DNA from: Octopus sinensis
Taxonomy: Eukaryota
DNA length: 64,000 nt
Assembly: GCF_006345805.1 (NCBI RefSeq)
Contig: NC_042999.1
Span: 3,844,001-3,908,000, forward strand
Reading direction: 5' to 3'
Shown here: positions 6,432 through 60,290 of the stretch, piece after piece
Numbering within the stretch: position 1 is the first letter of the stretch
Layout: each line of letters opens with the position of its first letter
Notes under the pieces: generated by a model
The model's database searches: none
What the model was told of the DNA's origin: nothing
What the model saw: the letters and a program-made list of their open reading frames with translations, nothing else
Made by a program: the position numbers and the translations under genes

Positions 6432-7824
6432 CTGAAATTCAATGTATAGAAATATATTCTTCTATTGAAAGTCTCCTCCTAGAAAGGTCAATGACATATT
6501 CTACATTGGTTTAAAAATGGAATTCATCCAATATTATTCTATTTTGATTTGTATCTAATAACTTTGATACAAGTCGAAATGTCAGTTACAAATCAGGATG
6601 CCATTTAGAAAGATTTTAATAAAATGATATTTTCAAAAGAAAACAAAGCAAAAAAAAAAAAAATTAAAATTGAAAAGCTAATGAAGAAAAATCATAAACT
6701 CTAACTAGTAAAAGAGGAAAACAGTACATATGTGTGTGTGTGTGAATATATATATATATATATATACACATAGACACACACACACACACACACACGCACG
6801 CACACACACACACACAAGCACACAAACGTTCATGTGTGTGTGTGTCCAATGGTGAGCTGCCAAGATTTAACAACCAGTTCACACAGCTGCCAAAGTTTTG
6901 AGAGTCATTTTGCTACGCTACCAAACTTTTAAACACCAATTCTATGTAAAAAAAAAAAATTAGAAGTTCAACAACATAATATAGCTTCATTAATGTAATA
7001 TTAAAATAGGCAAAAAGCCTGGAATAAAAGGAAATGGTCTGTATTGGTAAAAAATCAGTCAATACAAGATATGAAAAATTGGTGAAATTTATTTGTCATG
7101 AATCTTGCAGAATATGTTGCATTGTTTTGGTCATTTGTCTGAGAGTAAGGAAATGAGGAATATAAACTGAAGATGATGTATTGATTAGATGAGGATGGGA
7201 ATTGCCAAGCAAGAGGAGTGGTATAAGAGGTTAAGAACTGAAGGAGGTGAAGAGATGAAGAAAGATAAAAAATTTGGACAGAGAGGGCCATAAAGATATA
7301 CATGAAACAACCAGAAAAAATGATGCAATTAGGATATCAGGGTTAAAGTGTTGTAGTGAAAAGAATGGTGGGATAGAAGCTTCAAAACATATATATGTGT
7401 GCAGGGGTATAATGTGTGTGAGTGTGTGTGTATGTAGGCACAGGAGTGGTTGTGTGATAAGTAGCTTGTTTACGATGATGATGATGATGGTTCCAGGTTC
7501 AGTCCCACTGTGTGGCACCTTGGACAAGTGTCTTCTATATAGCCTCAGGCCAATCAAAGCCTTGTGAGTGGATTTGGGAGACAGAAACTGAAAGAAGCCC
7601 ATCGTATATGTGTGTGTGTGTGTGTATTTGTGTGTCTATTTTCTCCCTTATCAATGCTTGACAACCAATGTTGGTGGGTTTACATTCTCATAAGTCAGTG
7701 ATTTGGCAAAAGAGACTGATAGAACAAGTACTAGAGGTCAATTTGTTCAACTAAAAAGGCAGTGCTCCAGCATGGCCACAGTCAAATGACTGAAACAAAT
7801 AAAAGAATTAAAAAAAGAAAAATG

Positions 7825-8047
7825 TATGACCCTTCTGTCTGGCAGTCGCCATGATAGATCGGTAGCCACTACACACATTTTTTTTCTCTCCTTGTTTCTC
7901 TCCGTGTTTTTTTTTTCTGTGTCCCTTTCTGTAGAAGAGCGTAGACTCAAAACGTAAAAGATTTTTTCTATTCCTGAGCGTTATACTAATACATCTGTTT
8001 GTTTTGCACACCATCTGTCTTCATCTTTTATTTTTTTCGTGAACTCT

Positions 8048-8050
<3 letters not shown>
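7825..8050 (+). mobile_element. Penelope-like terminal repeat fragment (family P1); second copy ~9290-9515, relative at ~55672-55870
   Basis: Shared ctttctgtNgaagagcgtag(g/a)ctc(g/a)aaac(g/a)taaaag motif followed by a T-rich 3' part ending in (TA)n; the class assignment is inferred from the hammerhead-like motif. Confidence 0.5.
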
Positions 8051-8119
<69 letters not shown>

Positions 8120-8479
8120 TTTGGTGATGCAAACAAGAAGACATGTTTATTTTGTTAATAATTGGCAGAAGTTACAGCATGACCCAGGGGCTGAGAGTTT
8201 TATGCATTTGATAAGTGCCAAGGCACACAAAAATCTCAGCCCTTGACAATAACTTCTGCCAATTATTAATAAAAAGACACAAGGCTTTGATTGGCCTGGG
8301 GTGCCTCACAGTGGGACTGAACCCAGAACCATTGGTTGGGAAGCAAACTTCCGGCTACACAGCCACAAAGATCACACAACAAGCCAAGACATGTCAAGAA
8401 ATTCAGTCATGCTTTCATGGTGGATGCAAGCAAACAACACTATCCATGAACACTCCGAGAAACAAGGGAAATACAAACT

Positions 8480-8591
8480 CAAACACACATATGTACACAC
8501 AAACACACACACACACAAACACACACACACAAACACACACACACAAACACACACATACACACACACACAAACACACACAAACACACACACA

Positions 8592-8653
<62 letters not shown>

Positions 8654-8855
8654 CAAATACACACACACACAAGCACACACACACACACACACAAACACAC
8701 ACAACACACACACCACAACACACACACAAACACACAGACACACACACAAACACACACACACACACACACACCACACACACACACAAACACACACACATGC
8801 GCACGCACACAAACACACACACACACGCGCATGCGCACACACAAATACACACACA
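8480..8855. repeat. Compound (CA)n microsatellite (duplicated at ~9930-10335)
   Basis: Direct reading. Confidence 0.97.
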
Positions 8856-9512
8856 GGTTTCTTTCAGTTTCTATCCACCAAATCCACTGACAAGGTTTTG
8901 GTCAGATGCCATACAGTGGGACTGAACCCCAAACCATTTGACTGGGAAACAAAATTCTTAATGACACAGTCTTGTCTGTAATTAGTTAAGTAGTTTCATT
9001 GTTCAAACAATAGGAATAATCACCAGAGAATTAAAATCACCAGAGAATCCACTTATTCTGTTTTATTGCATTGTAATGTGTGTGTGTGTGTATTTGTGTG
9101 TCTATTTTCTCCCTTATCAATGCTTGACAACCAATGTTGGTGGGTTTACATTCTCATAAGTCAGTGATTTGGCAAAAGAGACTGATAGAACAAGTACTAG
9201 AGGTCAATTTGTTCAACTAAAAAGGCAGTGCTCCAGCATGGCCACAGTCAAATGACTGAAACAAATAAAAGAATTAAAAAAAGAAAAATGTATGACCCTT
9301 CTGTCTGGCAGTCGCCATGATAGATCGGTAGCCACTACACACATTTTTTTTCTCTCCTTGTTTCTCTCCGTGTTTTTTTTTCTGTGTCCCTTTCTGTAGA
9401 AGAGCATAGACTCAAAACGTAAAAGATTTTTTCTATTCCTGAGCGTTATACTAATACATCTGTTTGTTTTGCACACCATCTGTCTTCATCTTTTATTTTT
9501 TTCGTGAACTCT

Positions 9513-9561
<49 letters not shown>

Positions 9562-10115
9562 TTTGGTGATGCAAACAAGAAGACATGTTTATTTTGTTAA
9601 TAATTGGCAGAAGTTACAGCGTGACCCAGGGGCTGAGAGTTTTATGCATTTGATAAGTGCCAAGGCACACAAAAATCTCAGCCCTTGACAATAACTTCTG
9701 CCAATTATTAATAAAAAGACACAAGGCTTTGATTGGCCTGGGGTGCCTCACAGTGGGACTGAACCCAGAACCATTGGTTGGGAAGCAAACTTCCGGCTAC
9801 ACAGCCACAAAGATCACACAACAAGCCAAGACATGTCAAGAAATTCAGTCATGCTTTCATGGTGGATGCAAGCAAACAACACTATCCATGAACACTCCGA
9901 GAAACAAGGGAAATACAAACTCAAACACACATATGTACACACAAACACACACACACAACAAACACACACACACAAACACACACACACAAACACACACATA
10001 CACACACACACAAACACACACAAACACACACACAACAACACACACACACACACACACCACAAACACACACACCACACAAACACACACCACACACACACAA
10101 ATACACACACACACA

Positions 10116-10148
<33 letters not shown>

Positions 10149-10211
10149 CACACACAAACACACACACACAACAACACACACACACACACAAACACACACA
10201 CAAACACACAC

Positions 10212-10243
<32 letters not shown>

Positions 10244-10688
10244 AACACACACACACACAACACACACAAACACACACACAACACACACAACACAAACACA
10301 CACACACGCGCATGCGCACACACAAATACACACACAGGTTTCTTTCAGTTTCTATCCACCAAATCCACTGACAAGGTTTTGGTCAGATGCCATACAGTGG
10401 GACTGAACCCCAAACCATTTGACTGGGAAACAAAATTCTTAATGACACAGTCTTGTCTGTAATTAGTTAAGTAGTTTCATTGTTCAAACAATAGGAATAA
10501 TCACCAGAGAATTAAAATCACCAGAGAATCCACTTATTCTGTTTTATTGCATTGTAATGTGTGTGTGTGTGGTTACTCCTTAATTAAAAATGAGTTATGA
10601 CCACAGAAGAAAACATTTTGTTACTGATATATACAGAATTTTATCTTCAATTACTAATGTAACATTTAACAAAATATCTGATATAATA

Positions 10689-10851
10689 GGCGCAGGAGTG
10701 GCTGTGTGGTAAGTAGCTTGCTTCCCAACCACATGGTTCCAGGTTCAGTCCCATTGCATGGCACCTTGGGCAAGTGTTTTCTACTATAGCCTTGGGCCAA
10801 TCAAAGCCTTGTGAGTGGATTTGATAGATGGAAACTGAAAGAAGCCCATCG

Positions 10852-10886
<35 letters not shown>

Positions 10887-11096
10887 ATGTTTGTGTGTCT
10901 GTGTTTGTCCCCCCAACATTACTTGACAACCGATGCTGGTGTGTTTACGTCCCCGTCACTTAGCAGTTCAGCAAGAGAGACTGATATAATAAGTACTAGG
11001 CTTACAAAGAATAAGTCCTGGGGTCGATTTGCTCGACTAAAGGCGGTGCTACAGCATGGCCGTAGTCAAATGATTGAAAAACAAATAAAAGAAGAA
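10689..11096 (+). mobile_element. Full-length family B SINE
   Basis: tRNA-like head with A box tggctgtgtgg and B box ggttcagtcc, central ccttgggcaagtg, internal (TA)(TG)n, tail caaatgattgaaaacaaataaaaga. Confidence 0.9.
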
Positions 11097-11811
11097 TATT
11101 CATCTTTTTACACAGTTGAAGGGACTCATGTACTGAATGTTGTTCCCCTTATTTCTGAGATGGCTTGCTCCCTTGATCTCTAGCATCTAAGCCATATTCA
11201 GAGTCATCTGTCTGTCTGATAATCTTTCTTTAATTGACAACCTGACTACTTTCAGTTTCTGGTTCCTCAAGAACCCACACCACACCATGCCAGAGTATCT
11301 TCAATGATCTTCAACAATTCCTTATGTCAGTTTATCTTCTGCAATTACAATGACATCTATTCTAAAACAGATAACAGTAGCCACACTCCAGAACTCTTAC
11401 ACTGCACTTGCCTATCTGCTTCTTAAATACCACCATGTTGTTTTTCCTGTGAATCTTAGATGAAGTAATACTTATAGTTTTTTTCAACCTTAGCACTTCA
11501 AGATTCCTTCTGTTACTAGATTTTCCCACAATAGAAATTAAATTCCATTACAGCAATTGTATTTAACACACTTAACAGCATCTTCATGGTTTAAAATAGA
11601 ACCTTATCTCTAGGCTAAAAGTATTTGTCTTCCTTGAAGACAAAAGAAAAGAAATTTAAGATGTATTTTAGATTATCCTAAGATTATACTAGATATAATA
11701 AAAAAAATGGGGGATTTCTACAATTTTCTTTATATGCAATTTAGAAATTTCTTTCTGATCACATATTCATCAAAAATATTGTTGACATTCAATAAAACTG
11801 AACATTTAGTT

Positions 11812-12226
11812 GGAGTGGCTGTGTGGTAAGTAGCTTGCTTACCAACCACATGGTGCTGGGTTCAGTCCCACTGCGTGGCACTTTGGGCAAGTGTCTTCTA
11901 CTATAGCCTCGGGCCGACCAAAGCTTTGTGAGTGGATTTGGTAGACGGAAACTGAAAGAAGCTCGTTGTATATATGTATATGTATATATATATATGCGTG
12001 TGTGTATATGTTTGTGTGTCTGTGTTTGTCCCCCCAACATCTCTTGACAACAGATGCTGGTGTGTTTACCTCCCCTGTTACTTAGTGGTTTGGCAAAAGA
12101 GACCAATAGAATAAGTACTAGGCTTACAAAGAATAAGTCCTGGGGTCGATTTGCTTGACTAAAAGTGGTGCTCCAGTATGGCCACAGTCAAATGACTGAA
12201 ACAATTAAAAGAGTAAAGAGAAAAGA
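11812..12226 (+). mobile_element. Full-length family B SINE
   Basis: Co-linear with 10689-11096. Confidence 0.9.
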
Positions 12227-17054: not shown

Positions 17055-17377
17055 GCACTCCATCGCTTATGATGACAAGGGTTCCAGTTGATCCAATCAA
17101 CGGAACAGCCTGCTTGTGAGATTAACATGCAAGTGGCTGAGCACTCCACAGACACATATAACCCTTCACATACTTCTCAGGGAGATTCAGCATGACACAG
17201 AGTGTGACAAGGCTGGCTCTTTGAAATATAGGTACTACTCATTTTTACTAGTTGAGAGGACTGGAGCAATGTGAAATAAAGTGTCTTGCTCAAGGACAAA
17301 ATGTACTGCTGGGAATCGAACTCAAGACTCTATGATTGCGAGCCAAATACTCTAACCACTAAGCCACGTGCCTTCAC
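17055..17377 (-). mobile_element. tRNA-derived SINE, family C
   Basis: Minus-strand head gaaggcacgtggcttagtggttagag..gagttcgattccc, central tccttgagcaagacacttt; tail shared with the family D copy at 39249. Confidence 0.85.
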
Positions 17378-23147: not shown

Positions 23148-23535
23148 AAAGTTAGACCATTACAATGAGAGAAGCAAGGGAAGTTAGACCATTACAGTGA
23201 GAGAAACAAGGGAAGTTAGACCATTACACTGAGAAACAAGGGAAGTTAGACCATTACACTGAGAAACAAGGGAAGTTAGACCATTACACTGAGAAACAAG
23301 GAAAGTTAGACCATTACACTGAGAAACAAGGGAAGTTAGACCATTACAATGAGAAACAAGGGAAGTTAGACCATTACAATGAGAAACAAGGGAAGTTAGA
23401 CCATTACAATGAGAAACAAGGGAAGTTAGACCATTACACTGAGAAACAAGGAAAGTTAGACCATTACAATGAGAAACAAGGGAAGTTAGACCATTACACT
23501 GAGAGAAACAAGGGAAGTTAGACCATTACAATGAG
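23148..23535. repeat. 30-bp minisatellite, 13 copies (ccattaca(c/a)tgagaaacaagggaagttaga)
   Basis: gttagacc recurs every 30 bp (32 bp for three units); there are no spacers. Confidence 0.97.
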
Positions 23536-26500
23536 ACGTTTTATGTCATTACTTCCTTTCAGATTCAATTGTCTGAAATTAGGAAAAGACTGCTTTTTAT
23601 CGATTTCTAGGGTACCTATATTGAGATTTCAGCTCCAACTTGTTACTTTAACATTACTCTAGAGCAAAAGTTCTCAACCCATTTTGGCCATATGCCCCCT
23701 TTTGACCCTTGGAGTTACAAATGCCCCCCCTCCCACCCTACAAAATATTTTTATTTTTCAATATCCTACTTATTCTGATGTCAGTAAAAATGATGAAAAA
23801 ATAAAGGACGTCATTTTACGTATAGACTTGTATGCATAGAGTCTAGATTCTAGAGAATAGATTTCCCCACAAGCGATGATACTTTCTATTCAATTTAATA
23901 TACTCTTTTACTCTGGTGACATTTACCATTATATTCCAATAATTCAATGTTTTTTTTTTTTTGTTTAAATCTGACATAAGAAAATATCTCAAGGCATGGT
24001 CAAGGAGTAAATTTAAGAACAAACATTATGAAAAGACTGATCTCATTTTCAAAATAAAAGATTTCATTTATTCAACACTAACATTCAAAGTCATTTATGT
24101 GACATTTTGTTCTGGTTATTTTTGCCATTTATACACTTTTATTATTTTATTTTCATTTCTTCCTTCTTTATTTCTATTGTTCTTTGTAATTCTTGCCTTA
24201 AGTAATCACCTTCAAATATTCCGAACCATATTATTGACTTTGTGACTGAACAGACATTAAATGACAAGTTCTAATGCTGTTTTCATTTTGCAATAAAACA
24301 TTTAACTCAACTAAAAGTAAAGAGGAAAACGAAAAGGGTGAGAATTAAAAGACAAGGAATCCGCATAAGCAAGTCTTTGAGAAGCGGTAAATGGGAGAAG
24401 GAGAAGTAAGCAAAACTAGAAACTTGTAAATGAATGCCAAATAATCTAATGCATTTTCCACTAATTTGTAACAGCTTTATTTTGACAAAATACATTTTTA
24501 AATGTATTATTGTTGCTACAGCTTAATACAGTTTAGCTAAAAGATAGAAATTGGTTTAACATTTATATTTGAAGTGTTCAGAAATTGTTTACACAGCATA
24601 TAAACCATTAAATGAAATTATTAAAAATATAGATAAACATTTTACATCATCTTTTAGACAAGTTATAAATGAATTGTTGAATTAAAATTGGTAAAATTAT
24701 TTTACCTGGTAACTAAATCTACAGCCCAAAGATTCAAAATGGAGCAATAATATGGTTATATATATTAGTTTCTAATTTTGGCACAAGGCCAGCAATTGAT
24801 TAGATTACTTTGACCCAAGTGCTCAAGTGATGCTTATTTTATTGACTCTGAAAGGAGGAAAAGCAAAGTCCACCTCAGCAGAATTTGAACTTAAAAACAT
24901 AAAAACAAGGAACCAATAAGTATTTTGCCTGGTGTGCTAACAATTCTGCCAGCTTTTTTCTTTTCAATTCTGATTACCAAAACAGCAGTCCTAATAATGT
25001 TAATTACATATTCCTCCAATAACTCGAAAGTCTTCTGTAGTTTTTTTTTCTTTTAGTGGGGTGGTGTTTTTTAACAGTCAACATTGACCATGCTTGTCTT
25101 TGATTTTTACTCAGAGTTAGGAGATAGATGATGGCACACTTATTTCCTGATAGAATGGTTGGCAATTATTTTATTGTCTTTGAAACAAAGAGAAATGTAA
25201 CATGATATTCACAGACAATAATTTACTATTTCTATCCTTATATTTTAATCTCTGTTACCACGTCTTTATTGAAATGCACTACCTTCGTTTCACTTAATTT
25301 TTGAAATTAAGGAAGAATTTATCAAAATAGTTTGGCTATTATTAAGCTGGTGTTTGGAACATAATAAAACCTTCCATTAAAATTCCATGTTATAATTTAG
25401 ATCACTTTAAAATAAGAAAATTGTATCGCAAAACCAGTGGTGGTCCTCGGCAGGTTGGTATTAAAGGGGTGAAATATATAATCCAGTGAAATATCATAAT
25501 CAAAAACATTCTAGCAGTGACTTAAGACTACATTCTCCAATGCCTCCCTCTCTTTCCTAAAATAATAGGATGCGACTTAATGGGGAACTGACTGCTATTT
25601 CTAATAGGTCAGCAGACCACATAAAGGCTCCTATTTCTAAGCTAATATAAATTGAAAACTTGAATATATTATACAAATTTAAAGTGAAATATAATTAATG
25701 AAAGTGTTAATATAAACTAAATGGATTAAATAGAAATGCCATACATTTAACTAATTACCACACTATATTTGCAGCTAATTATCAGGATGCATTTACTGAT
25801 AATTATCACACTGTATTTAATGTTATTTTAATATAGAATAATGAAAGCAGTAAGATAATTGAAATCAAACTACAAATATTTTCTATTAGTGTAACTGTTG
25901 TTACTGTCAATACTAATATATTTTCCTTCCAGATATTCTTGTGGGAAGGAAGGGTGACACTAGAAATACCAGTTCATGAGATGAAAATGTTCAAGAACAT
26001 ATGCGTAAATACATGTATTGCTTCATTCAACAGCCGGATGTCTTTCTTGTTGCAACCCTCACCTGTTTCTAAGCAAGATAATATTTCCTCATGTTTAGAT
26101 ATATTTTCACAAAAGATTCATAGCGAAGGACATTGCTTATACAATGGTGTCACTCATTTACATTCATCACACAATGTCATGACAAGACACGCATATGTGT
26201 GTACATATACACACATACATACTTATAACAGGTTTCTTTCAGGGCCAGTCTACCATTTAAAAGGTTTCAATTTGATGGCCTGGGGTCACTCAGAATGCTA
26301 GGGTTTACATAAACATTACAAAGTTTGTTTTTGTATTTGGTTTGCAAAATTCTTATAAGAATTTGTGTGTTGAAACAAAACCAATGGATTAACGATAAAT
26401 TAGAATTGAAAGTGTGCATGTGTTATTATTATTTGTGCAATGACTTTCCCCCAAGACACAACAAAATTTTGAAGTTTATTACCATTAGTATTGTCAGTTT

Positions 26501-31689: not shown

Positions 31690-32060
31690 TATTCTCTTAT
31701 TTGTTTCAGTCATTTGACTGCAGCCATGCTGGAGCACCACCTTTAGTTGGACAAATCTACTCCAGGATTTATTTTTTGTAAGCCTAGTACTTATTCTATC
31801 AGTCTCTTTGGCTGAACTGCTAAGTTATGGGGACGTAAACACACCAACATCATTTGTCAAGCAATGGCGGGGGGACACATATATATGTGTATATATTTAT
31901 ATACAATGGGCTTCTTTCAGTTTCCATCTACCAAATCCACTCACAAAGCTTTGGTCGGCCCAAGGCTACAGTAGAAGACACTTGCCCAAGGTGCCATGCA
32001 GTGGGACTGAACCCAAAACCATGTGGTTGGTAAGCAAGCTACTTATCACACAGCCAATCC
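31690..32060 (-). mobile_element. Family B SINE (an inverted partial + copy follows at ~32260-32470)
   Basis: Co-linear reverse complement of family B. Confidence 0.88.
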
Positions 32061-32709
32061 TGCACCTATATATATATATATCTAACACCATTCCCATGTG
32101 GGAACCTACAAATAAAGCGTATTTATCCACCGATGCAATGTTATCCATTCAGTCTCAACATTAGTGTATGCGTGTGTGTGTGTGCATGCATGTGTGCGTG
32201 TATGCATACATGTGTGTGTGAGTGCATGTGTGCGTATGCGTGTGTGTGTGTGTGCGAGTGTGTGTGTGTTTATCTCCCTAGCATTGCTTGACAACCGATG
32301 CTGGTGTGTTTACATCCCTGTCACTAAGCAGTTCGGCAAAAAGAGACCAATAGAATAAGTACTGGGCTTACAAAGAATAAGTCCCAGGGTCGATTTGCTC
32401 GACTAAAGGCGGTGCTCCAGTATGGCCGCAGTCAAATGACTGAAACAAGTAAAAGAGTAAAAGAGAAAGAGTAAAGGGAGTGTGTGTGTGTGTGTGCATG
32501 CATGTGTGCATGTGTATTTGTATGTGTATGTGCACCCGTGCATGTGTGTGTGTATTCAGTTTCCATTGACCGAATTCATTCACAAAAGTTTGCTTAACCC
32601 AGGGATGTAGTAGAAGCAACTACTTGCCCAAGATGACAAGCAAAGGGATTGAACCAGGCACCGCATGTTTATAGCAAAAGATTTCTTAACCACAAAACCT
32701 GCACTTACT

Positions 32710-34739: not shown

Positions 34740-35410
34740 CTTTTATCTTTTACTTGATTCAGTCATTAGACTGCGGTCATGCTGATGAAGCACTACCTTG
34801 AAGAACTTTTAGTTGAATGAAACCCTAGTACTTAGTTTTTTAAGCCTCTTTTGCTGAACCACTAAGTTACAGGGGCATAAACACACCAACACTGGTTGTC
34901 ATGTGATGGGTGGGGACACAAACATACATACAAAGACATACTCCCCCCACACACACACAAACATATGACGGGCTTCTTTCAGTTTCCATCTACCAAATCC
35001 ACTCACAAGGCTTTGGTTGGCCTGACTATAGTAAAAGACATTTACCCAAGGTTGTTTGTTCCTTCTCAAGCCATGCCTGGCTCATAAGGGCCAGTTTCCC
35101 GGTTTCCTTGGTTCCCCACCTGGATGGGATGCTGGTCCGTCACAGGTGAGCTGCAAGATGCAGGAGGAAAGAATGAGAAAAAGTTGCGGTGAAAGAGTCA
35201 GCAGAAGTTCGCCATTACCTTCTGCCAGAGCCGTGTGGAGCTTAGGTGTCTCACTCATAAACACACACATCGCCCGGTCTGAGATTCGAACCTGCGAGTC
35301 TGCTGCTCTAACCAATAGGCCATGTGCCTCCACTACTTACCTAAAGTGCTATGCAGTGGGACTGAACCTGGAACATGTGGTTGGGAAGCAAATTTTTTTA
35401 CCACATAGCC
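34740..35410 (-). mobile_element. Family B SINE interrupted by a family D SINE (~35060-35335)
   Basis: The B sequence stops at ttacccaagg (~35050) and resumes near cctaaagtgctatgcagtgggactgaacc (~35340); the D head lies at ~35335. Confidence 0.8.
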
Positions 35411-35850: not shown

Positions 35851-36182
35851 TACATACATACATATGTATACATCCCACTCTCTCATATACATACATATGT
35901 ATTCATCCCACTCTCTCATATACATACATATGTATTCATCCCACTCTCTCATATACATACATATGTATACACCCCACTCTCTCATATACATACATATGTA
36001 TACACCCCACTCTCTCATATACATACATATGTATACACCCCACTCTCTCATATACATACATATGTATACATCCCACTCTCTCATATACATACATATATAT
36101 ACATCCCACTCTCTCATATACATACATATACATACATCCCACTCTCTCATATACATATGTATACATCCCACTCTCTCATATA
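35851..36182. repeat. 33-bp minisatellite, ~10 copies (tacatacatatgtatacatcccactctctcata)
   Basis: Direct reading; the ORF track shows an 11-aa periodicity. Confidence 0.95.
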
Positions 36183-36814
36183 CTCTTGCAATCTCTACTC
36201 ACTTCATACCTTGAGGGCCCTTCCAAACACCTTATACCCAATACTTTTCTCTCTTCCCAGCTCCACCTTGATCATCCCCTATTCTCTCTTCTGAAATGTG
36301 AATAGCCAGGCTTCTATCAGTTTCCGTCTACCAAATCCACTCATAAGGCTTTGGTCAGCCCAAGGCTATAGTACAAAACACTTGCCCAAGTTTCCATGCA
36401 GTGGGACAGAACCCAGAACCATGTGGTTGGGAAGCAAGCTTTTTACCACACAGCCACACATGTGACTATAGTATATCTTATGGCTACAGTTAACAGTATG
36501 AATGCAACTAGTGAGTTTAGAGTTCCATGTAGAGTATCCTCATCCAGTCTGTTTCTACTTTTGTGAAACATCTGATCTCTGTAACACTGCAATAAAGTGT
36601 TCCCCTAATAACCTGTTGTGATTCAGCATCCAATTGCACTTGAAACAGCCATTGGAGAGGTTGTAAATAACCACAATGGTGAAACGACATAGGGATCAGA
36701 CTATATAAACTTACAGACAGGACTTCAAGTTTCTCTGTCAACTATACAACTATGTAATGATCACCACCCTTTACAAACATGAAGAAATCTTCTCACTGGC
36801 AGTGCAGTGTTTTT

Positions 36815-38094: not shown

Positions 38095-38690
38095 AGCTGG
38101 TAGAAACATTAGCATGCCAGGTGAAATACTTAGCGGTACTTCGTCTGCCGCTACGTTATGAGTTCAAATTCCGCCGAGGTTGACTTTGCTTTTCATCCTT
38201 TTGGGGTTGATTAAATAAGTACTAGTTACACACTGGGGTCGATATAATAGACTTAATCTGTTTGTCTGTCCTTGTTTGTCCTCTCTGTGTTTAGCCCCTT
38301 GTGGGTAGTAAAGAAACAGGTATTTCATCTGTCTTTACGTTCCGAATTCAAATTCTGCTGAGGTCATCTTTGCCTTTCATCCTTTCGGGGTCGATAAAAT
38401 AAGTACCAGTTACACACTGAGGTCAATATAATCGACTTAATCTGTTTGTTCTTGTTTGTCCTCTCTGTGTTTAGCCCCTTGTGGGTAGTAAAGAAACAGG
38501 TATTTCATCTGTCTTTATGTTCTGAATTCAAATTCTGCTGAGGACAACTTTGCCTTTCATCCTTTCGGGGTCGATAAAATAAGTACTCGTTACGCACTGG
38601 GGTCGATATAATCGACTTAATCCCTTTGTCTGTCCTTGTTTGTCCCCTCTACGTTTAGCCCCTTGTGGGCAATAAAGAAATAAGAAACAA
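38095..38690 (+). mobile_element. Family A SINE trimer (one head, three bodies)
   Basis: The body restarts at 38136, 38320 and 38500 (periods 184 and 180 bp). Confidence 0.9.
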
Positions 38691-49587: not shown

Positions 49588-49750
49588 GGCGCAGGAGTGG
49601 CTGTGTGGTAAGTAGCTTGCTAACCAACCACATGGTTGCGGGTTCAGTTCCACTGCGTGGCACCTTGGGCAAGTGTCTTCTGCTATAGCCCCGGGCCGAC
49701 CAATGCCTTGTGAGTGGATTTGGTAGACAGAAACTGAAAGAAGCCTGTCG

Positions 49751-49797
<47 letters not shown>

Positions 49798-50003
49798 TTG
49801 TGTGTCTGTGTTTGTTCCCCTAGCATTGCTTGACCGATGCTGGTGTGTTTACGTCCCCGTCACTTAGCGGTTCGGCAAAAGAGACCGATAGAATAAGTAC
49901 TGGGCTTACAAAGAATAAGTCCCGGGGTCGATTTGCTCGACTAAAGGCGGTGCTCCAGCATGGCCACAGTCAAATGACTGAAACAAGTAAAAGAGTAAAA
50001 GAG
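49588..50003 (+). mobile_element. Full-length young family B SINE
   Basis: CpG-retaining, complete from head to tail. Confidence 0.92.
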
Positions 50004-50029: not shown

Positions 50030-50403
50030 ACATTTGACTGAGGCCAAACTGGAGCACCGCCTTTAATCCAGCAAAGTGACCCCAGGACTTATTCTTTGTA
50101 AGCCTAGTACTTATTCTATCGGTCTCTTTTGCCGAACTGCTAAGTTACAGGGATGTAAACACACCAGCATCGGTTGTCAAGCGATGTTGGGGTGACAAAC
50201 ACAGACACACAAATATAAACACACACATACACACATATACATATATACAACGGGCTTTTTTCAGTTTCCGTCTACCAAATCTACTCACAAGGCTTTGGTC
50301 GGCCCAAGGCTATAGTAGGAGATACTTGCCCAAGGTGCCACGCAGTGGGACTGAACCCGAACCATGTGGTTGATAAGCAAGCTACTTACCACACAGCCAC
50401 TCC
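50030..50403 (-). mobile_element. Family B SINE, tail-to-tail with the previous copy
   Basis: Reverse-complement copy starting a few tens of bp after the + copy ends. Confidence 0.9.
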
Positions 50404-51386
50404 TAATCCAAACATAATTAGGTTAAGACAAATATCTCATAAATATTCTTTGTAACTTTCACTGCCAAGCCTTCACAACACACTTTGTTTATTCACTAGT
50501 AACATATTGTGAAGGTAAACACACTCCCTATACTTGCTAAAATAATATGGCAGGTTCAAACGTTTAAAACTAAATCTAACACCATGTACTAACCCCCTAA
50601 GAACCCTTACTCTGAAAAGTAAGTTAATAACTTACTTCCATTGCAGAGAATACAGTATACCAATTAGAAAAAGGAAAAAGTTAAATATATTCCATTTACA
50701 GTTAAATTTCAAGAGAGGTTCCAGGGGTTAGGAAGTTAACAGGTGGCATTGTATTTCAAATATTTCCAACTTCATATGATTAGAGTTGAAGGGTTGAATA
50801 TTTCCAATTTTTAATTCATTTCTAAGAAAGAAAAAGGTGTGTCACGAAGGTTTAGTATGTATAACATGACGGCTGTCTTCTAAGAATGTTCTGAGAATTA
50901 TTATTATATGTTTTATATCTTAAAACAAAGGCAATGTTTCTCTTTCACTTGTTTTATCAACTGGTCAACCACTTAACTAATTGATTGCTTGGTTAACCAT
51001 ATTTGGCCTTCAATTAATGGCCCCAGAGTGGACAGACACCCGGAATAGTAAGGGCAAATCATGGATGAGGTTACAAATGGTGACAAGAGAACTACCAAAC
51101 CTAACCAGTTAATTGACTGAATGATTACTCTGTCAGTTAATTGGTTAACTAACTGGCAAAGAATAAATGAAATTAAATAGAACCAGTGTGTTTATTATTG
51201 GTATAATGATTTCCTAAGATACAAAATCTGTTTCAACAAACAATTTCACTGCATGAATCTTGCAAAAACATTATTATATGACCTTTTTTAATCCAGCATG
51301 AGATTGAAACTAAGGATGCTGGAAAATTGGTAGAGTACCTGTATTTGACATTTTAAATTTAATCGTTTTAATAATTTTTCTCATAA

Positions 51387-51488
51387 TTAACTTTTGTTTC
51401 TTTCTTTCTCTTTTTCTAGGTAAGTTGAAACTTATTCTGTTCTATCTTTCAAATATATTCACTTTCAAAATATAAAACACAGGTAAGA
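51387..51488 (+). promoter_or_regulatory. Candidate recursive splice site with 63-nt cryptic exon
   Basis: TTAAC (51387-91), 27-nt pyrimidine tract, AG|GTAAGT at 51419/51420, second donor CAG|GTAAGA at 51482/51483. Confidence 0.4.
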
Positions 51489-53859
51489 AACTTGACCTAC
51501 ATTCTAAACTTAATAACCACAGCAAAATAATTCAGAAGGAAGAAAAAAAATCTATAAATTTGTTGTTATACATCAATAAGCAAAATATATTCATAACATT
51601 CTCTTTCTTGTTCGGATATTCAACAACTGAAGATTCCTCCTGCAATTATTTTAAATTGCAGACATTTTCTTTCACCTCTTTCCTCTGGTAATATTCTTGG
51701 AGAAAGTATATTACTATTTCCACAGAGGTAGAGCTTTGTTTAAACTGTGATAAGCATTAAAATCACATACTGGAAAAAATATCAAAAGTCCATCTGATAT
51801 GCACACGCCACACACATACATAGTAATCTTTCATTTTACAATCAGAAAACAAGTGAAAATATTGATATTCTGCAGTTTCCATGTAGACATGCTAACTAGG
51901 TACCTCCTACCCATTTTTTTCTCCAAGAATTTCTTCAGATTCCAATGGGTCTTTTAGCACAAAGAATATAAAAAAACAGCTTTTCAAATTACTAATACTC
52001 ATCACTCAGTTTTTATTTTTCTTAATTCCATGTTCAAAAACTTGATGATTATGATTTGGAAAATTTTTCTCTAGTTTCATTTTTTAAACCAATGTGCTTA
52101 CAATAATTTTTCATTTTCACTTAGTGATTGTAAAACACAAAGTATACCACACACACACACACACGCACACATACATAAATGTCTAATACACAATGGTAAT
52201 TTAAATGATACAAGGAATTGAATATAATCATGAATTTGAAAATTTGTACTTAATATTTCTTATCAAAAAAAAAAAGAGAAACAATTTGGTAACGAGCTAA
52301 AGGCATGAGTATAATTTTTTCTAAGTAATCCAAGAATTGTAAAATGTTAAAGTGGATGATTGTTAATGTAAATTTAAAGTAAAAGAGATTAGAATAGAGC
52401 AAAAATTTGATTCTTTAAGGTATTTATATTTTTCTAAAAAATTCTATGGAAATTTTAATGGACAGACTTTTAGTTTTTAGTGAAATATTTGAGAATTTGA
52501 AGAAAAGTATTTATGTACCATTTAGTTTAGCTTCTAAAAAAATGGCTAAAGAATTCTATATATCAAAATATTTGTGGTAAAGACAATGTTTAGTATTTTT
52601 AACAGATGTGTCTTATGAAATTCTTCAATCTGAATACTTATTGTATAATTGATGAGACATTCCTATGGAATCAGATATCTAGTGTGCTAATTTTTTTGTA
52701 TCTGTACATTTTAAGCATTCTGCAAAAAAAAAAAAAAAAAAATGTGGGGTGGGAACAAGTTTTGCTCCCCACCCATTTCCTTTCTGTAATTTTCCAGTCT
52801 TAATGTTCTTTCAAAAATTTTATCCACACTTAAGTCTTAGAAGCATTTCAGGTACATATAACTGCAGGAATTTTTGTTTTTCCACATATTATTTTGGTTT
52901 CATTATCAATCCTGCAGAGTTATGTATTTAACACCAAAAATTGCCTATAATTTTTTTTAATAACAATCAATTTGGTATTCCTACAGAATCAAATAGGAAA
53001 TTATCTCACACACCAAAAACTAACTTCCTAAGACATTTATGCCCTAAGCATTAACAATCACTAAAAAAAAAAAGTTGGAGAATCCCTGCCACCCATTCTT
53101 TTCCTCTCTGTAAATTTACGGTTTCACCATTTTAAAAAATTTGGTAAATTTTTGCAATTACACCTGTCTATCATAGGTGTAATTTCAATTTTTATCCAAA
53201 ATTTTGTATTATTTTATCAATTTTTCCATTTTTATCTTCTAAATTCAGTAAATTTTTACTATTACACCCAACTCATGAGATGTATGTAAGAGAAAAATAT
53301 ATATTTTTGGAATAACTATCAGTATTTTGTAGAGAAGAAAAAAGAACAAGGAATTAGGTAGTTGTTTCATTCTATGAACAAAAATTTTGCTAACAAAAAA
53401 AAAACAACATGGACCTCCACTCCCACCCCACACCGATTTCATACCATTTTTCAGTAAATTATTATTACACCCATCTTTTGAAATGGATACAATAGGAAAA
53501 TTTATACTATAGAATGTTACATACATTTTTGAAGAATGATATTTTCTTTCTTTAGAAAAAATATATCCAAAATAATCAAATCTATGTTGAAGAATAAGAT
53601 GTAAAGCTACAAGTCTGAAGCAAAAGAGGAAGTCAGACAGAGAGTAGTTATCTTTTAACTTTTACTTGTTTCAGTCATTAGACTGCGGTCATGCTGGGGC
53701 ACTGCCTTGAAAAGTAGTAATTTTCTGAAGGCAGTAATATATCTCATAAGTTTATTCAGCTTATATATTATATGTTATATATATATTTATTATATTTTAT
53801 ATATATATATATATATAATATATATATATATATAAATATATATATACATTTTCTGTGTC

Positions 53860-54552: not shown

Positions 54553-54650
54553 ATATATAGATTATTATATATATATATATTATGTATTATATTTTTATTT
54601 CTTTAACTTTATACATACATGCACAAATACATACAGCTGAAAAAGAAGTA

Positions 54651-54845
54651 ATTTCTACTCTTCTCCTCTGGAAGCCATCTACTCGCAACACCAGAGGGCG
54701 CACACTCTCCTACCCTGATGTAATCTCCAGGGATACAGGCATCCAGCAACAGGACCTCCGTAATGCTATGATGGACCGTGAAGTCTGGCGCAACATGGTA
54801 AATTCCATTGTCGCGACCACGGTCGAACAATGATGATGATGATGA
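54651..54845 (+). mobile_element. 5'-truncated RTE LINE insertion with intact ORF2 C-terminus
   Basis: STLLLWKPSTRNTRGRTLSYPDVISRDTGIQQQDLRNAMMDREVWRNMVNSIVATTVEQ*, matching the RTE C-terminal pattern; the stop is the first TGA of the (TGA)n tail. Confidence 0.88.
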
Positions 54846-58478: not shown

Positions 58479-58810
<332 letters not shown>

Positions 58811-59130: not shown

Positions 59131-59320
59131 TTTTAGAATTTTATTCAAATAAACATCGTCACTTTACTAATATACTGCAGCAGAATAATATCGATAATGT
59201 TTTGATAGAAACTTAAACATTATCTAACATCTTTTTCTAAGATTTTGGTCACCTTTTTCCAATTGAATATTTCTACCATTTGAGGACATGTTTATATAAT
59301 AATAATAATAATGATAATAA

Positions 59321-59722
59321 GGAGTCGCTGTGTGGTAAGTAGCTTGCTAACCAACCACATGGTTCCGGGTTCAGTCCCACTGCGTGGCATCTTGGACAAG
59401 TGTCTTCTGCTATAGCCCCGGGCCGACCAAAGCCTTGTGAGTGGATTTGGTAGACGGAAACTGAAAGAAGCCTGTCGTATATATGTATATATATATATAT
59501 GTGTGTGTGTGTGTTTGTGTGTCTGTGTTTGTCCCCCTAGCATTGCTTGACAACCGATGCTGGTGTGTTTACGTCCCCCCGTCACTTAGCGGTTCGGCAA
59601 AAGAGACCGATAGAAGAAGTACTGGGCTTACAAAAGAATAAGTCCCGGGGTCGATTTGCTCGACTAAAGGCGGTGCTCCAGCATGGCCGCAGTCAAATGA
59701 CTGAAACAAGTAAAAAGAGAAG
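59321..59722 (+). mobile_element. Full-length young family B SINE
   Basis: Near-consensus and CpG intact. Confidence 0.92.
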
Positions 59723-59745: not shown

Positions 59746-60122
59746 AACAAGAGCACTCAGAGAGCGCAAACCTCCGCCAAGGCAACACCAACATCCTCTC
59801 AACGATTAGCCAGAAATGATTTTTAAAATGAGAATGTCTGAAATAAACTCGACTGCTCTAACAAACGTGAATACTAAAAATGAACCCGACTGCTCTCAAG
59901 AATTAAGTAAAAAAAAAAATTTTTTTTAAAGGGTAAAACAATCCAGAATCCTTGTTCTGTACCGGATCGATCCCAAATCTAATCAGTTCGTGCCAGTCAC
60001 AAGGCCAAACATTCTTGAAAGTTTCATCCGAATCCATCCAGCGGTTCTTGAGATATCTTGTCCACAGACAAACAAACACGGCTGAAAACAATGCTTCCGC
60101 CTTTGCTAAGGCGGAGGTTATA
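59746..60122 (-). mobile_element. Helentron-associated (DINE-1/HINE-like) non-autonomous element
   Basis: Subterminal inverted acctccgcc/ggcggaggt, hairpin cttccgcctt-tgct-aaggcggagg at one end and gcgctc-tct-gagtgc at the other, no TSD. Confidence 0.7.
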
Positions 60123-60134
60123 ATACTTTCTACT

Positions 60135-60290
60135 GAAGGTACAAGGCCTTGAAATTTTCGGGAAGGGGACTAGTCGATTACATCGATCCCAGTGTTTCAC
60201 TGGTACTTAATTAATCGAACCCCGAAAGGATGAAAAGCAAAGTCGTCTTTGGCGGAATTTGAACTCAGAACGTAGCGGCAGACGAAATAC
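60135..60290 (-). mobile_element. Family A SINE (partial)
   Basis: Reverse complement of the A body. Confidence 0.8.

What the first reader, a model, noticed from the sequence alone, without database searches (positions are those of the whole stretch)
51387..51488. Recursive-splice-site architecture: branch point, pyrimidine tract, AG|GTAAGT, then a 63-nt poison exon
Seen in non-repeat DNA on +: TTAAC 29 nt upstream of the AG, a 27-nt tract with a single purine, an acceptor fused to a perfect donor consensus, and a second strong donor (CAG|GTAAGA) 63 nt downstream. The enclosed segment has stops in all three frames. Known: Drosophila ratchet points and vertebrate RS-exons in very long introns have this layout. 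Inference: recursive splicing in a mollusc, which I do not know to be described. Caveat: it needs a + strand transcript, whereas other clues favour a minus-strand gene.
Basis: partly seen in the sequence, partly recalled or inferred. Interest (0 to 1): 0.7.

Follow-up and report, generated by a model that had tools for sequence, protein, structure and literature searches.

The report
Candidate recursive splice site, octopod DNA
A short stretch of octopus-like non-coding DNA looks like a "recursive" splice site, the kind flies and vertebrates use to remove very long introns in steps; it is far too good to be chance, but nothing here shows that this strand is transcribed.

Summary
The parts are TTAAC (51387-51391), a 27-nt pyrimidine tract with one purine (51391-51417), AG|GTAAGT (51418-51425), and a second donor CAG|GTAAGA whose GT lies 63 nt downstream (51483). 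The segment between has stops in all three frames.

AGGTAAGT alone is at chance level: 2 seen, 2.3 expected. The ensemble is not. With a generic splice-site matrix, the acceptor is the best of about 128,000 positions on both strands. The fused acceptor+donor scores 26.9 bits against 18.4 for the runner-up. Markov simulations reached that score in 0/200, 0/200 and 1/200 windows. The 63-nt pseudo-exon is the best acceptor-donor pair in the window. A rough joint estimate is about 1e-5 per window.

Every sequence criterion of a fly ratchet point with its cryptic RS-exon is met, including TT at -5/-6.

The decisive conditions could not be tested: transcription of the + strand, position inside a long intron, conservation, and junction reads. 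I found no coding exon in the 64 kb. The strand skews are ambiguous. One SINE-derived ORF matches an Argonauta protein, so the window is probably octopod.

Verdict: a strong, sequence-only candidate, P about 0.45. It would be a new member of a known kind.

The parts
51380..51384 (+). Alternative branch-point-like motif CTCAT (A at 51383, 36 nt from the 3' splice site)
   Evidence: YTNAY scan
51387..51391 (+). Branch-point-like motif TTAAC (A at 51390, 29 nt from the G of the AG)
   Evidence: Sequence; YTNAY scan. A motif this loose is expected by chance in about a quarter of such intervals (my estimate).
51336..51417 (+). AG-free zone of 82 nt upstream of the acceptor
   Evidence: The nearest upstream AG ends at 51335
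51391..51417 (+). Polypyrimidine tract, 26 of 27 pyrimidines, (TTTC)-like, with TT at -5/-6
   Evidence: Only about 0.03% of 27-nt windows in the window reach 26/27 pyrimidines. TT at -5/-6 is found in 99.5% of fly ratchet points (10.1101/006163).
51418..51425 (+). Fused acceptor|donor AG|GTAAGT, the putative ratchet point (splice to 51420; donor regenerated after ligation)
   Evidence: Acceptor 16.6 bits, rank 1 of about 128,000 positions. Fused score 26.9 bits against 18.4 for the next best. Simulations.
51420..51482 (+). 63-nt putative cryptic RS-exon, stops in all three frames, 24% GC
   Evidence: Best acceptor+donor pair of 432 candidates on both strands, 27.8 bits against 24.4. Translations.
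51480..51488 (+). RS-exon donor CAG|GTAAGA (GT at 51483)
   Evidence: 11.2 bits, rank 9 of all positions. One of two CAGGTAAGA in the window.

Best explanation
The element is a recursive splice site (ratchet point) with its cryptic RS-exon, on the + strand, inside a very long intron of a gene or long non-coding transcript whose exons lie outside the window.

Proposed mechanism (inferred):
1. The 63-nt segment 51420-51482 is first recognised by exon definition. U2AF and U2 bind the TTAAC branch point, the 27-nt pyrimidine tract and the AG. U1 binds CAG|GTAAGA at 51483.
2. The upstream exon is spliced to 51420, which removes the first part of the intron.
3. This ligation places the upstream exon's last bases in front of GTAAGT and regenerates a full-strength donor at the junction.
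4. That donor competes with the RS-exon donor. GTAAGT matches U1 at +6, whereas GTAAGA does not. The 63 nt and the rest of the intron are then removed in a second step, leaving no trace in the mRNA.
5. If the downstream donor wins, a 63-nt stop-carrying exon is included.

Shown here: the sequence anatomy and its statistical exceptionality. Inferred: every step involving RNA.
For: - Exact anatomy confirmed.
- Best acceptor in 128 kb of strand, and a fused score 8.5 bits above the runner-up.
- At most 1 of 200 simulated windows reaches the fused score under any of three Markov orders.
- Best exon-definition pair in the window.
- A strong donor 63 nt downstream has p about 0.007.
- TT at -5/-6 and a prominent pyrimidine tract, as at fly ratchet points.
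- A short cryptic exon with its own donor, stop-laden, and a ratchet-point donor at least as strong as the RS-exon donor, as described in PMC8605326.
- An 82-nt AG-free zone and two branch-point-like motifs at 29 and 36 nt.
- 64 kb with no detectable coding exon, which is compatible with a very long intron.
- C>G on the + strand, the coding-strand direction reported for invertebrates.
Against: - There is no evidence of + strand transcription.
- No exon of any host gene was found, so the window may be intergenic.
- A>T on the + strand (3.2%, in all eight bins, about 5 SD) is the opposite of the general T>A on coding strands.
- AATAAA is commoner on + (80 against 59).
- There is only one such site in 64 kb.
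- Conservation could not be tested.
- The pyrimidine tract is (TTTC)-like. It could be a decayed microsatellite, or the antisense A-rich tail of a retroposon.
- The matrices are generic, and the features were picked after the fact.
Confidence: 0.45

Rival explanations
1. It is a non-functional pseudo-exon. A decayed (TTTC)n microsatellite, or the antisense A-rich tail of a minus-strand retroposon, supplied the pyrimidine tract. The AG|GTAAGT and the second donor arose by chance or came with the element. It lies in intergenic DNA or antisense to the host gene and is not used.
For: - AGGTAAGT itself is at chance frequency.
- Pyrimidine-rich 27-mers are common here: 94 (+) and 173 (-) windows reach 24/27 pyrimidines.
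- The reverse complement of the tract reads as an A-rich (GAAA)-like tail.
- An 11-nt direct repeat, AATAATTTTTC, brackets 51381-52101.
- A>T skew and an AATAAA excess on + fit a minus-strand or untranscribed context.
- An unrelated contig shares 25 of 26 nt of the core by coincidence, so such strings do recur.
Against: - The joint probability is about 1e-5 per window, or 0.3-1 per genome.
- No other copy of 50405-52100 exists in a window that holds more than 20 SINE copies.
- The 11-nt repeat is expected about 0.2 times by chance (my estimate), and it is not adjacent to the tail.
- No ORF or Pfam signal of a retroelement lies next to the site.
Confidence: 0.3
2. It is an ordinary, non-recursive 63-nt exon of a + strand transcript: a 5'-UTR exon, a lncRNA exon, or a regulated stop-carrying cassette exon. 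It merely happens to begin with GTAAGT. It is included or skipped by normal alternative splicing and the internal donor is not used.
For: - It is the best exon-definition pair in the window.
- It has no open frame, as expected for UTR or non-coding exons.
- Expressed exons with ratchet-point features exist in flies and are numerous in mammals (PMC8605326; abstract of PMC6224609).
Against: An exon that starts with a perfect GTAAGT is rare among ordinary exons, on the order of 1 in 1000-2000 by my estimate. Where such exons have been tested, they often do undergo recursive splicing. No neighbouring + strand exon candidates appear in the window.
Confidence: 0.15

Closest known systems
Drosophila intronic ratchet points with cryptic RS-exons (Ubx, kuz, Bx, luna; Hatton 1998, Burnette 2005, Duff 2015, Joseph 2018/2021)
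   Same: - Juxtaposed (Y)n-AG|GTAAGT.
- A very prominent pyrimidine tract with TT at -5/-6.
- A short downstream cryptic exon (about 50 nt in flies, 63 nt here) closed by its own donor.
- Exon content that is non-coding and carries stops.
- A ratchet-point donor at least as good as the RS-exon donor.
   Different: The taxon is different: octopod-like rather than insect. The host gene, intron length, strand of transcription, conservation and RNA intermediates are all unknown here. Fly ratchet points are defined by RNA evidence and deep conservation.
Vertebrate RS-exons in long neuronal genes (Sibley 2015; Blazquez 2018, PMC6224609)
   Same: The exon-definition-first mechanism: an RS-exon is spliced to the preceding exon, a 5' splice site is regenerated, the two donors compete, and the exon carries stops if it is included.
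   Different: Vertebrate intronic RS sites generally have less extreme motifs (from memory). There are few fully suppressed intronic sites and many annotated RS-exons under exon-junction-complex control. None of this is testable here.
Poison (NMD-targeting) cassette exons
   Same: A short exon with a stop in every frame, flanked by strong splice sites.
   Different: Poison exons are usually highly conserved and sit inside a coding region. Neither point is known here, and stops in all frames occur in 31% of random 63-mers of this window.
Exonisation of antisense retroposon tails (Alu-type exonisation)
   Same: A T-rich tract followed by AG that could derive from the antisense strand of an A-rich tail, creating a strong acceptor in non-coding DNA.
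   Different: No retroposon body, no convincing target-site duplication and no other family copy was identified. The resemblance comes from memory of the mammalian case.

Membership tests
Recursive splice site / ratchet point with RS-exon | [quoted passage not shown] | tested here: met
   TTTTTCTAG|GTAAGT at 51410-51425. Fused score 26.9 bits, rank 1, 8.5 bits above the next best. At most 1 of 200 simulated windows reaches it.
Recursive splice site / ratchet point with RS-exon | Prominent pyrimidine tract with TT at -5/-6 (99.5% of fly ratchet points) | tested here: met
   26 of 27 pyrimidines at 51391-51417. Positions -5 and -6 (51414, 51415) are T,T.
Recursive splice site / ratchet point with RS-exon | Downstream donor that defines a short cryptic RS-exon (about 50 nt) | tested here: met
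   CAG|GTAAGA with GT at 51483, so the exon is 63 nt. Donor rank 9 in the window. Best exon pair of 432 candidates.
Recursive splice site / ratchet point with RS-exon | Regenerated ratchet-point donor stronger than the RS-exon donor | tested here: inconclusive
   GTAAGT is perfect at +1 to +6; GTAAGA mismatches at +6. Positions -3 to -1 of the regenerated donor come from an unknown upstream exon. In genomic context the scores are 10.3 and 11.2 bits.
Recursive splice site / ratchet point with RS-exon | RS-exon is non-coding, out of frame or stop-carrying | tested here: met
   Stops in all three frames. The weight is low, because 31% of random 63-mers behave the same way.
Recursive splice site / ratchet point with RS-exon | Located in a long intron, on the sense strand of the host gene | not testable with these tools
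   No exon was found in 64 kb. The skews conflict. No annotation or genome of the source is available.
Recursive splice site / ratchet point with RS-exon | Core motif conserved in related species well above its flanks | not testable with these tools
   No octopod genome is reachable by DNA search. The metagenome scan gave only a coincidental 25/26-nt match. The exact ORF look-up found nothing.
Recursive splice site / ratchet point with RS-exon | RNA evidence: exon-to-ratchet-point junction reads, saw-tooth coverage, recursive lariats | not testable with these tools
   No RNA data are available.
Poison cassette exon | Lies within a coding transcript, so that inclusion introduces a premature stop; usually conserved | not testable with these tools
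   The host transcript is unknown.
Transposable-element-derived pseudo-exon | Sequence belongs to a dispersed repeat family, with target-site duplications | tested here: inconclusive
   No second copy in the window. One 11-nt flanking direct repeat is compatible with chance. Genome-wide copy number is not testable.

The most novel reading that the evidence does not exclude
Cephalopods, with their very large and repeat-filled introns, use fly-type zero-nucleotide recursive splicing with cryptic RS-exons. This site would be one of many. It would be the first case in Lophotrochozoa and would argue that the ratchet-point/RS-exon mechanism dates back to the bilaterian ancestor.
Probability: 0.4. 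Interest if true: 0.55.

Novelty: new member of a known kind. Interest (0 to 1): 0.4.

Why it matters
Recursive splicing has been documented with RNA evidence in Drosophila and in vertebrates. I found no paper in the searched library that describes it in molluscs or cephalopods.

Octopod genomes have long, SINE-filled non-coding stretches like this window, and accurate removal of huge introns is a real problem for them. A validated site would extend the mechanism to a third major bilaterian branch. It would also give a sequence template, strong (Y)n with TT at -5/-6, AG|GTAAGT, and a donor 50-70 nt downstream, for a genome-wide sense-versus-antisense scan.

The gain is incremental rather than conceptual. 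Specialists already regard the mechanism as unified across metazoans (PMC8605326).

Tried and rejected
1. Looking for the host gene.
- Six-frame ORFs of at least 55 aa, splice-flanked ORF candidates and a Pfam scan of the ten most protein-like ORFs gave no coding exon.
- The most protein-like ORF, 59906-60169 (-), hits only short repeat-derived proteins. It is a dispersed element, not a host-gene exon.

2. Exact look-up of ten window ORFs in the 15-billion-protein collection: none is present.

3. Rfam and tRNA scans for strand-informative RNA genes gave one marginal tRNA-like hit at 17308-17367 (-), probably a SINE head.

4. Orthologue search by exact 22-mer in metagenome contigs gave one hit (L001, JACCDX011415376.1). 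It shares only 25 of 26 nt and no flank, so I rejected it as coincidence.

5. Strand inference from composition: the A>T and C>G skews on the + strand point in opposite directions for an invertebrate. SINE orientations are mixed. Neither was used as evidence.

6. Local duplication as the source of the two AGGTAAG motifs: only AGGTAAG and AAACTT are shared, with no wider similarity (sequence; repeats).

7. Target-site duplication for a retroposon carrying the site: one 11-nt AT-rich repeat, compatible with chance.

8. 'Stops in all frames' as evidence for a poison exon: rejected as uninformative.

9. I ran no further search on the ORF beside the site. The collection returned only 6 candidates and one octopod protein for a SINE ORF present in more than 20 copies in this window, so a useful hit was very unlikely.

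Full report
**1. The observation**

- TTAAC is at 51387-51391, with its second A 29 nt from the G of the AG.
- The tract 51391-51417 is 27 nt with one purine (G at 51396).
- AG at 51418-51419 abuts GTAAGT at 51420-51425.
- CAG|GTAAGA is at 51480-51488, with GT at 51483, so the enclosed segment 51420-51482 is 63 nt.
- That segment has a stop in each frame.
- No AG occurs in the 82 nt upstream of the acceptor. A second branch-point-like motif, CTCAT, lies 36 nt upstream.
- The stretch 50405-52100 has no other copy in the window, although a SINE copy ends at 50404 and the window holds more than 20 such copies.

**2. Is it more than chance?**

The 8-mer AGGTAAGT is not: 2 are found on both strands and 2.32 are expected from shuffles. 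Stops in all frames are not either, since 31% of random 63-mers of this window have them.

The combination is an outlier. I scored every position on both strands with generic metazoan acceptor and donor matrices. These are written from my own knowledge and are not trained on cephalopods.
- The acceptor scores 16.6 bits, rank 1 of about 128,000 positions.
- The donor fused to it ranks 15, and the donor 63 nt downstream ranks 9.
- The fused acceptor+donor score is 26.9 bits. The next best on either strand is 18.4.
- Windows simulated from order-1, -3 and -5 Markov models of this window reached 26.9 bits in 0/200, 0/200 and 1/200 cases.
- Reading the real sequence backwards, which keeps its low-complexity tracts, gave at most 22.9 bits.
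- Among 432 acceptor-donor pairs 30-600 nt apart on both strands, 51420-51482 is the best at 27.8 bits; the next is 24.4.
- Empirically, the two strands hold 5 acceptors of at least 14 bits. GTAAGT occurs at 2e-4 per position. A donor of at least 11 bits falls 30-120 nt downstream of a given point with p = 0.007.

Multiplying these gives roughly 1e-5 per 64-kb window, or 0.3-1 chance cases in a 2-3 Gb genome. Allowing one or two orders of magnitude for that still leaves the site unlikely to be accidental.

**3. Surroundings**

The window is 35% G+C and dense in SINE copies, (AC)n arrays and minisatellites.

One SINE-derived ORF matches 'hypothetical protein Ahia01_000201400 [Argonauta hians]' at 78% identity. 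This supports an octopod origin, but it is a single hit.

I found no protein-coding exon on either strand.
- No long ORF looks coding.
- No splice-flanked open segment stands out.
- Ten candidate ORFs have no Pfam match.
- The most protein-like ORF, 59906-60169 (-), belongs to a dispersed family of short, sometimes internally repeated proteins.

The 64 kb is therefore either part of a very long intron or intergenic.

**4. Which strand is transcribed?**

This is the crux, and I could not settle it.
- After masking repeats, the + strand has A>T by 3.2% in all eight 8-kb bins (about 5 SD) and C>G by 2.1% (about 2.4 SD).
- According to PMC5786239, T exceeds A on the coding strand in eukaryotes generally, while C exceeds G on the coding strand in invertebrates.
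- The first rule points to the minus strand and the second to the plus strand.
- AATAAA is commoner on + (80 against 59), which follows from the A excess.
- SINE orientations are mixed.

**5. Mechanism proposed**

The anatomy is that of a fly-type ratchet point with its cryptic RS-exon. PMC8605326 gives these features:
- a tandem splice acceptor|donor;
- a short cryptic exon of variable length (about 50 nt) flanked by a downstream donor;
- recognition of that exon before splicing;
- subsequent use of the regenerated donor, so that the exon is always skipped;
- exon content that is poorly conserved and out of frame or stop-carrying;
- a ratchet-point donor generally stronger than the RS-exon donor.

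Duff et al. [quoted passage not shown]

All of these sequence features are present here, including TT at -5/-6. The regenerated donor would be xxx|GTAAGT against CAG|GTAAGA for the RS-exon. It is therefore at least equal and probably better, depending on the unknown upstream exon.

The inferred path is as follows:
1. The 63 nt is defined as an exon.
2. The upstream exon is spliced to 51420.
3. The regenerated GTAAGT donor is used to remove the 63 nt and the rest of the intron.
4. Occasional use of the 51483 donor would insert a 63-nt exon with stops.

**6. Rivals**

(a) A non-functional pseudo-exon. The pyrimidine tract is (TTTC)-like and reads in reverse complement as an A-rich tail. It could be a decayed microsatellite or the antisense tail of a retroposon. 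An 11-nt direct repeat brackets 51381-52101, but it is AT-rich, expected about 0.2 times by chance (my estimate), and not adjacent to the tail. No other copy or retroelement ORF was found. I give this 0.3.

(b) An ordinary non-coding or stop-carrying cassette exon that merely begins with GTAAGT. I give this 0.15. It shades into 'expressed RS-exon'.

**7. Comparison and novelty**

The site works like, and by sequence would qualify as, a ratchet point with an RS-exon. Membership cannot be granted, however. Sense-strand location in a long intron, conservation of the core, and RNA intermediates are all untestable with the tools at hand.

In the held library no paper holds both 'recursive splicing' and 'octopus'. 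The two papers that hold 'recursive splicing' with 'mollus-' and the one that holds it with 'cephalopod' are on unrelated subjects by title and abstract; I did not open them. If validated, this would be a new member of a known kind in a new phylum, not a new mechanism.

**8. What led nowhere**

- Exact look-up of window ORFs found nothing.
- Rfam and tRNA scans gave nothing useful.
- A 22-mer scan of metagenome contigs returned one contig that shares only 25 of 26 nt.

**Verdict**

P(recursive splice site) is about 0.45. Interest is moderate.

Noticed in passing
window 50953-51160: Cluster of homeodomain-type core motifs 260-440 nt upstream of the site. Three of the window's 16 TTAATTG lie within 133 nt (51011, 51109, 51137), and CTAATTG lies at about 50977. 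Part of the cluster sits in an imperfect hairpin (51102-51120 / 51129-51147, 84% complementary), with a weaker outer inverted repeat (50953-50978 / 51135-51160). It could be an enhancer-like element or a small foldback element.
   Followed up: partly
window 50031-50404 and more than 20 other places (e.g. 11812-12194, 10694-11101, 59317-59699, 49593-49976, 31711-32061): An abundant SINE-like element of about 380 bp, in both orientations, 70-89% identical between copies and often next to (AC)n. One translated copy matches an Argonauta hians hypothetical protein at 78% identity.
   Followed up: partly
window 59906-60169 (-): An 88-aa ORF (…FVCLWTRYLKNRWMDSDETFKNVWPCDWHELIRFGIDP…) related to 19 short proteins in the representative library. 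In some of them the motif is repeated in tandem. No Pfam family matches. It looks like a dispersed repeat-derived ORF, and a SINE-like piece lies just upstream.
   Followed up: partly
window about 7750-9000 and about 9216-10460: Two adjacent near-identical segments about 1.44 kb apart, each holding a long impure (AC)n array. ORFs 8215-8925 and 9657-10406 share their first 100 or so residues. This is a local tandem duplication.
   Followed up: no
window 23149-23536; 35854-36183; 38152-38680; 58479-58630: Minisatellites and satellites: a 30-nt unit x 12.7 copies, a 33-nt unit x 10.1, a 180-nt unit x 2.9 (SINE-related sequence), and (AGAT)37.
   Followed up: no
window 54561-54830 (+): An ORF ending …DLRNAMMDREVWRNMVNSIV… resembles the C-terminal tail of non-LTR retrotransposon ORF2 proteins. 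This is from memory only; there was no Pfam hit.
   Followed up: partly
whole window: A consistent strand asymmetry remains after repeat masking. The + strand has A>T by 3.2% in all eight 8-kb bins and C>G by 2.1%. AATAAA counts are 80 on + and 59 on -. The cause, transcription or replication, is unknown.
   Followed up: partly
window 35335-35342 (-): The only other AGGTAAGT in the window. Its acceptor is poor (5.0 bits), it has no pyrimidine tract, and it lies in a GC-rich repeat-related stretch. It is an ordinary chance occurrence.
   Followed up: yes
window 17308-17367 (-): A marginal Rfam tRNA hit (31.2 bits, gathering score 29) that ARAGORN does not call. It is probably a tRNA-derived SINE head.
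   Followed up: no
L001 1924-1949 (JACCDX011415376.1): An unrelated 2.5-kb contig holds TTTCTTTTTCTAGGTAAGTTGAAAC, 25 of 26 nt identical to the core of the site, with no similarity in the flanks. It is a coincidence and a reminder that such strings recur in very large collections.
   Followed up: yes
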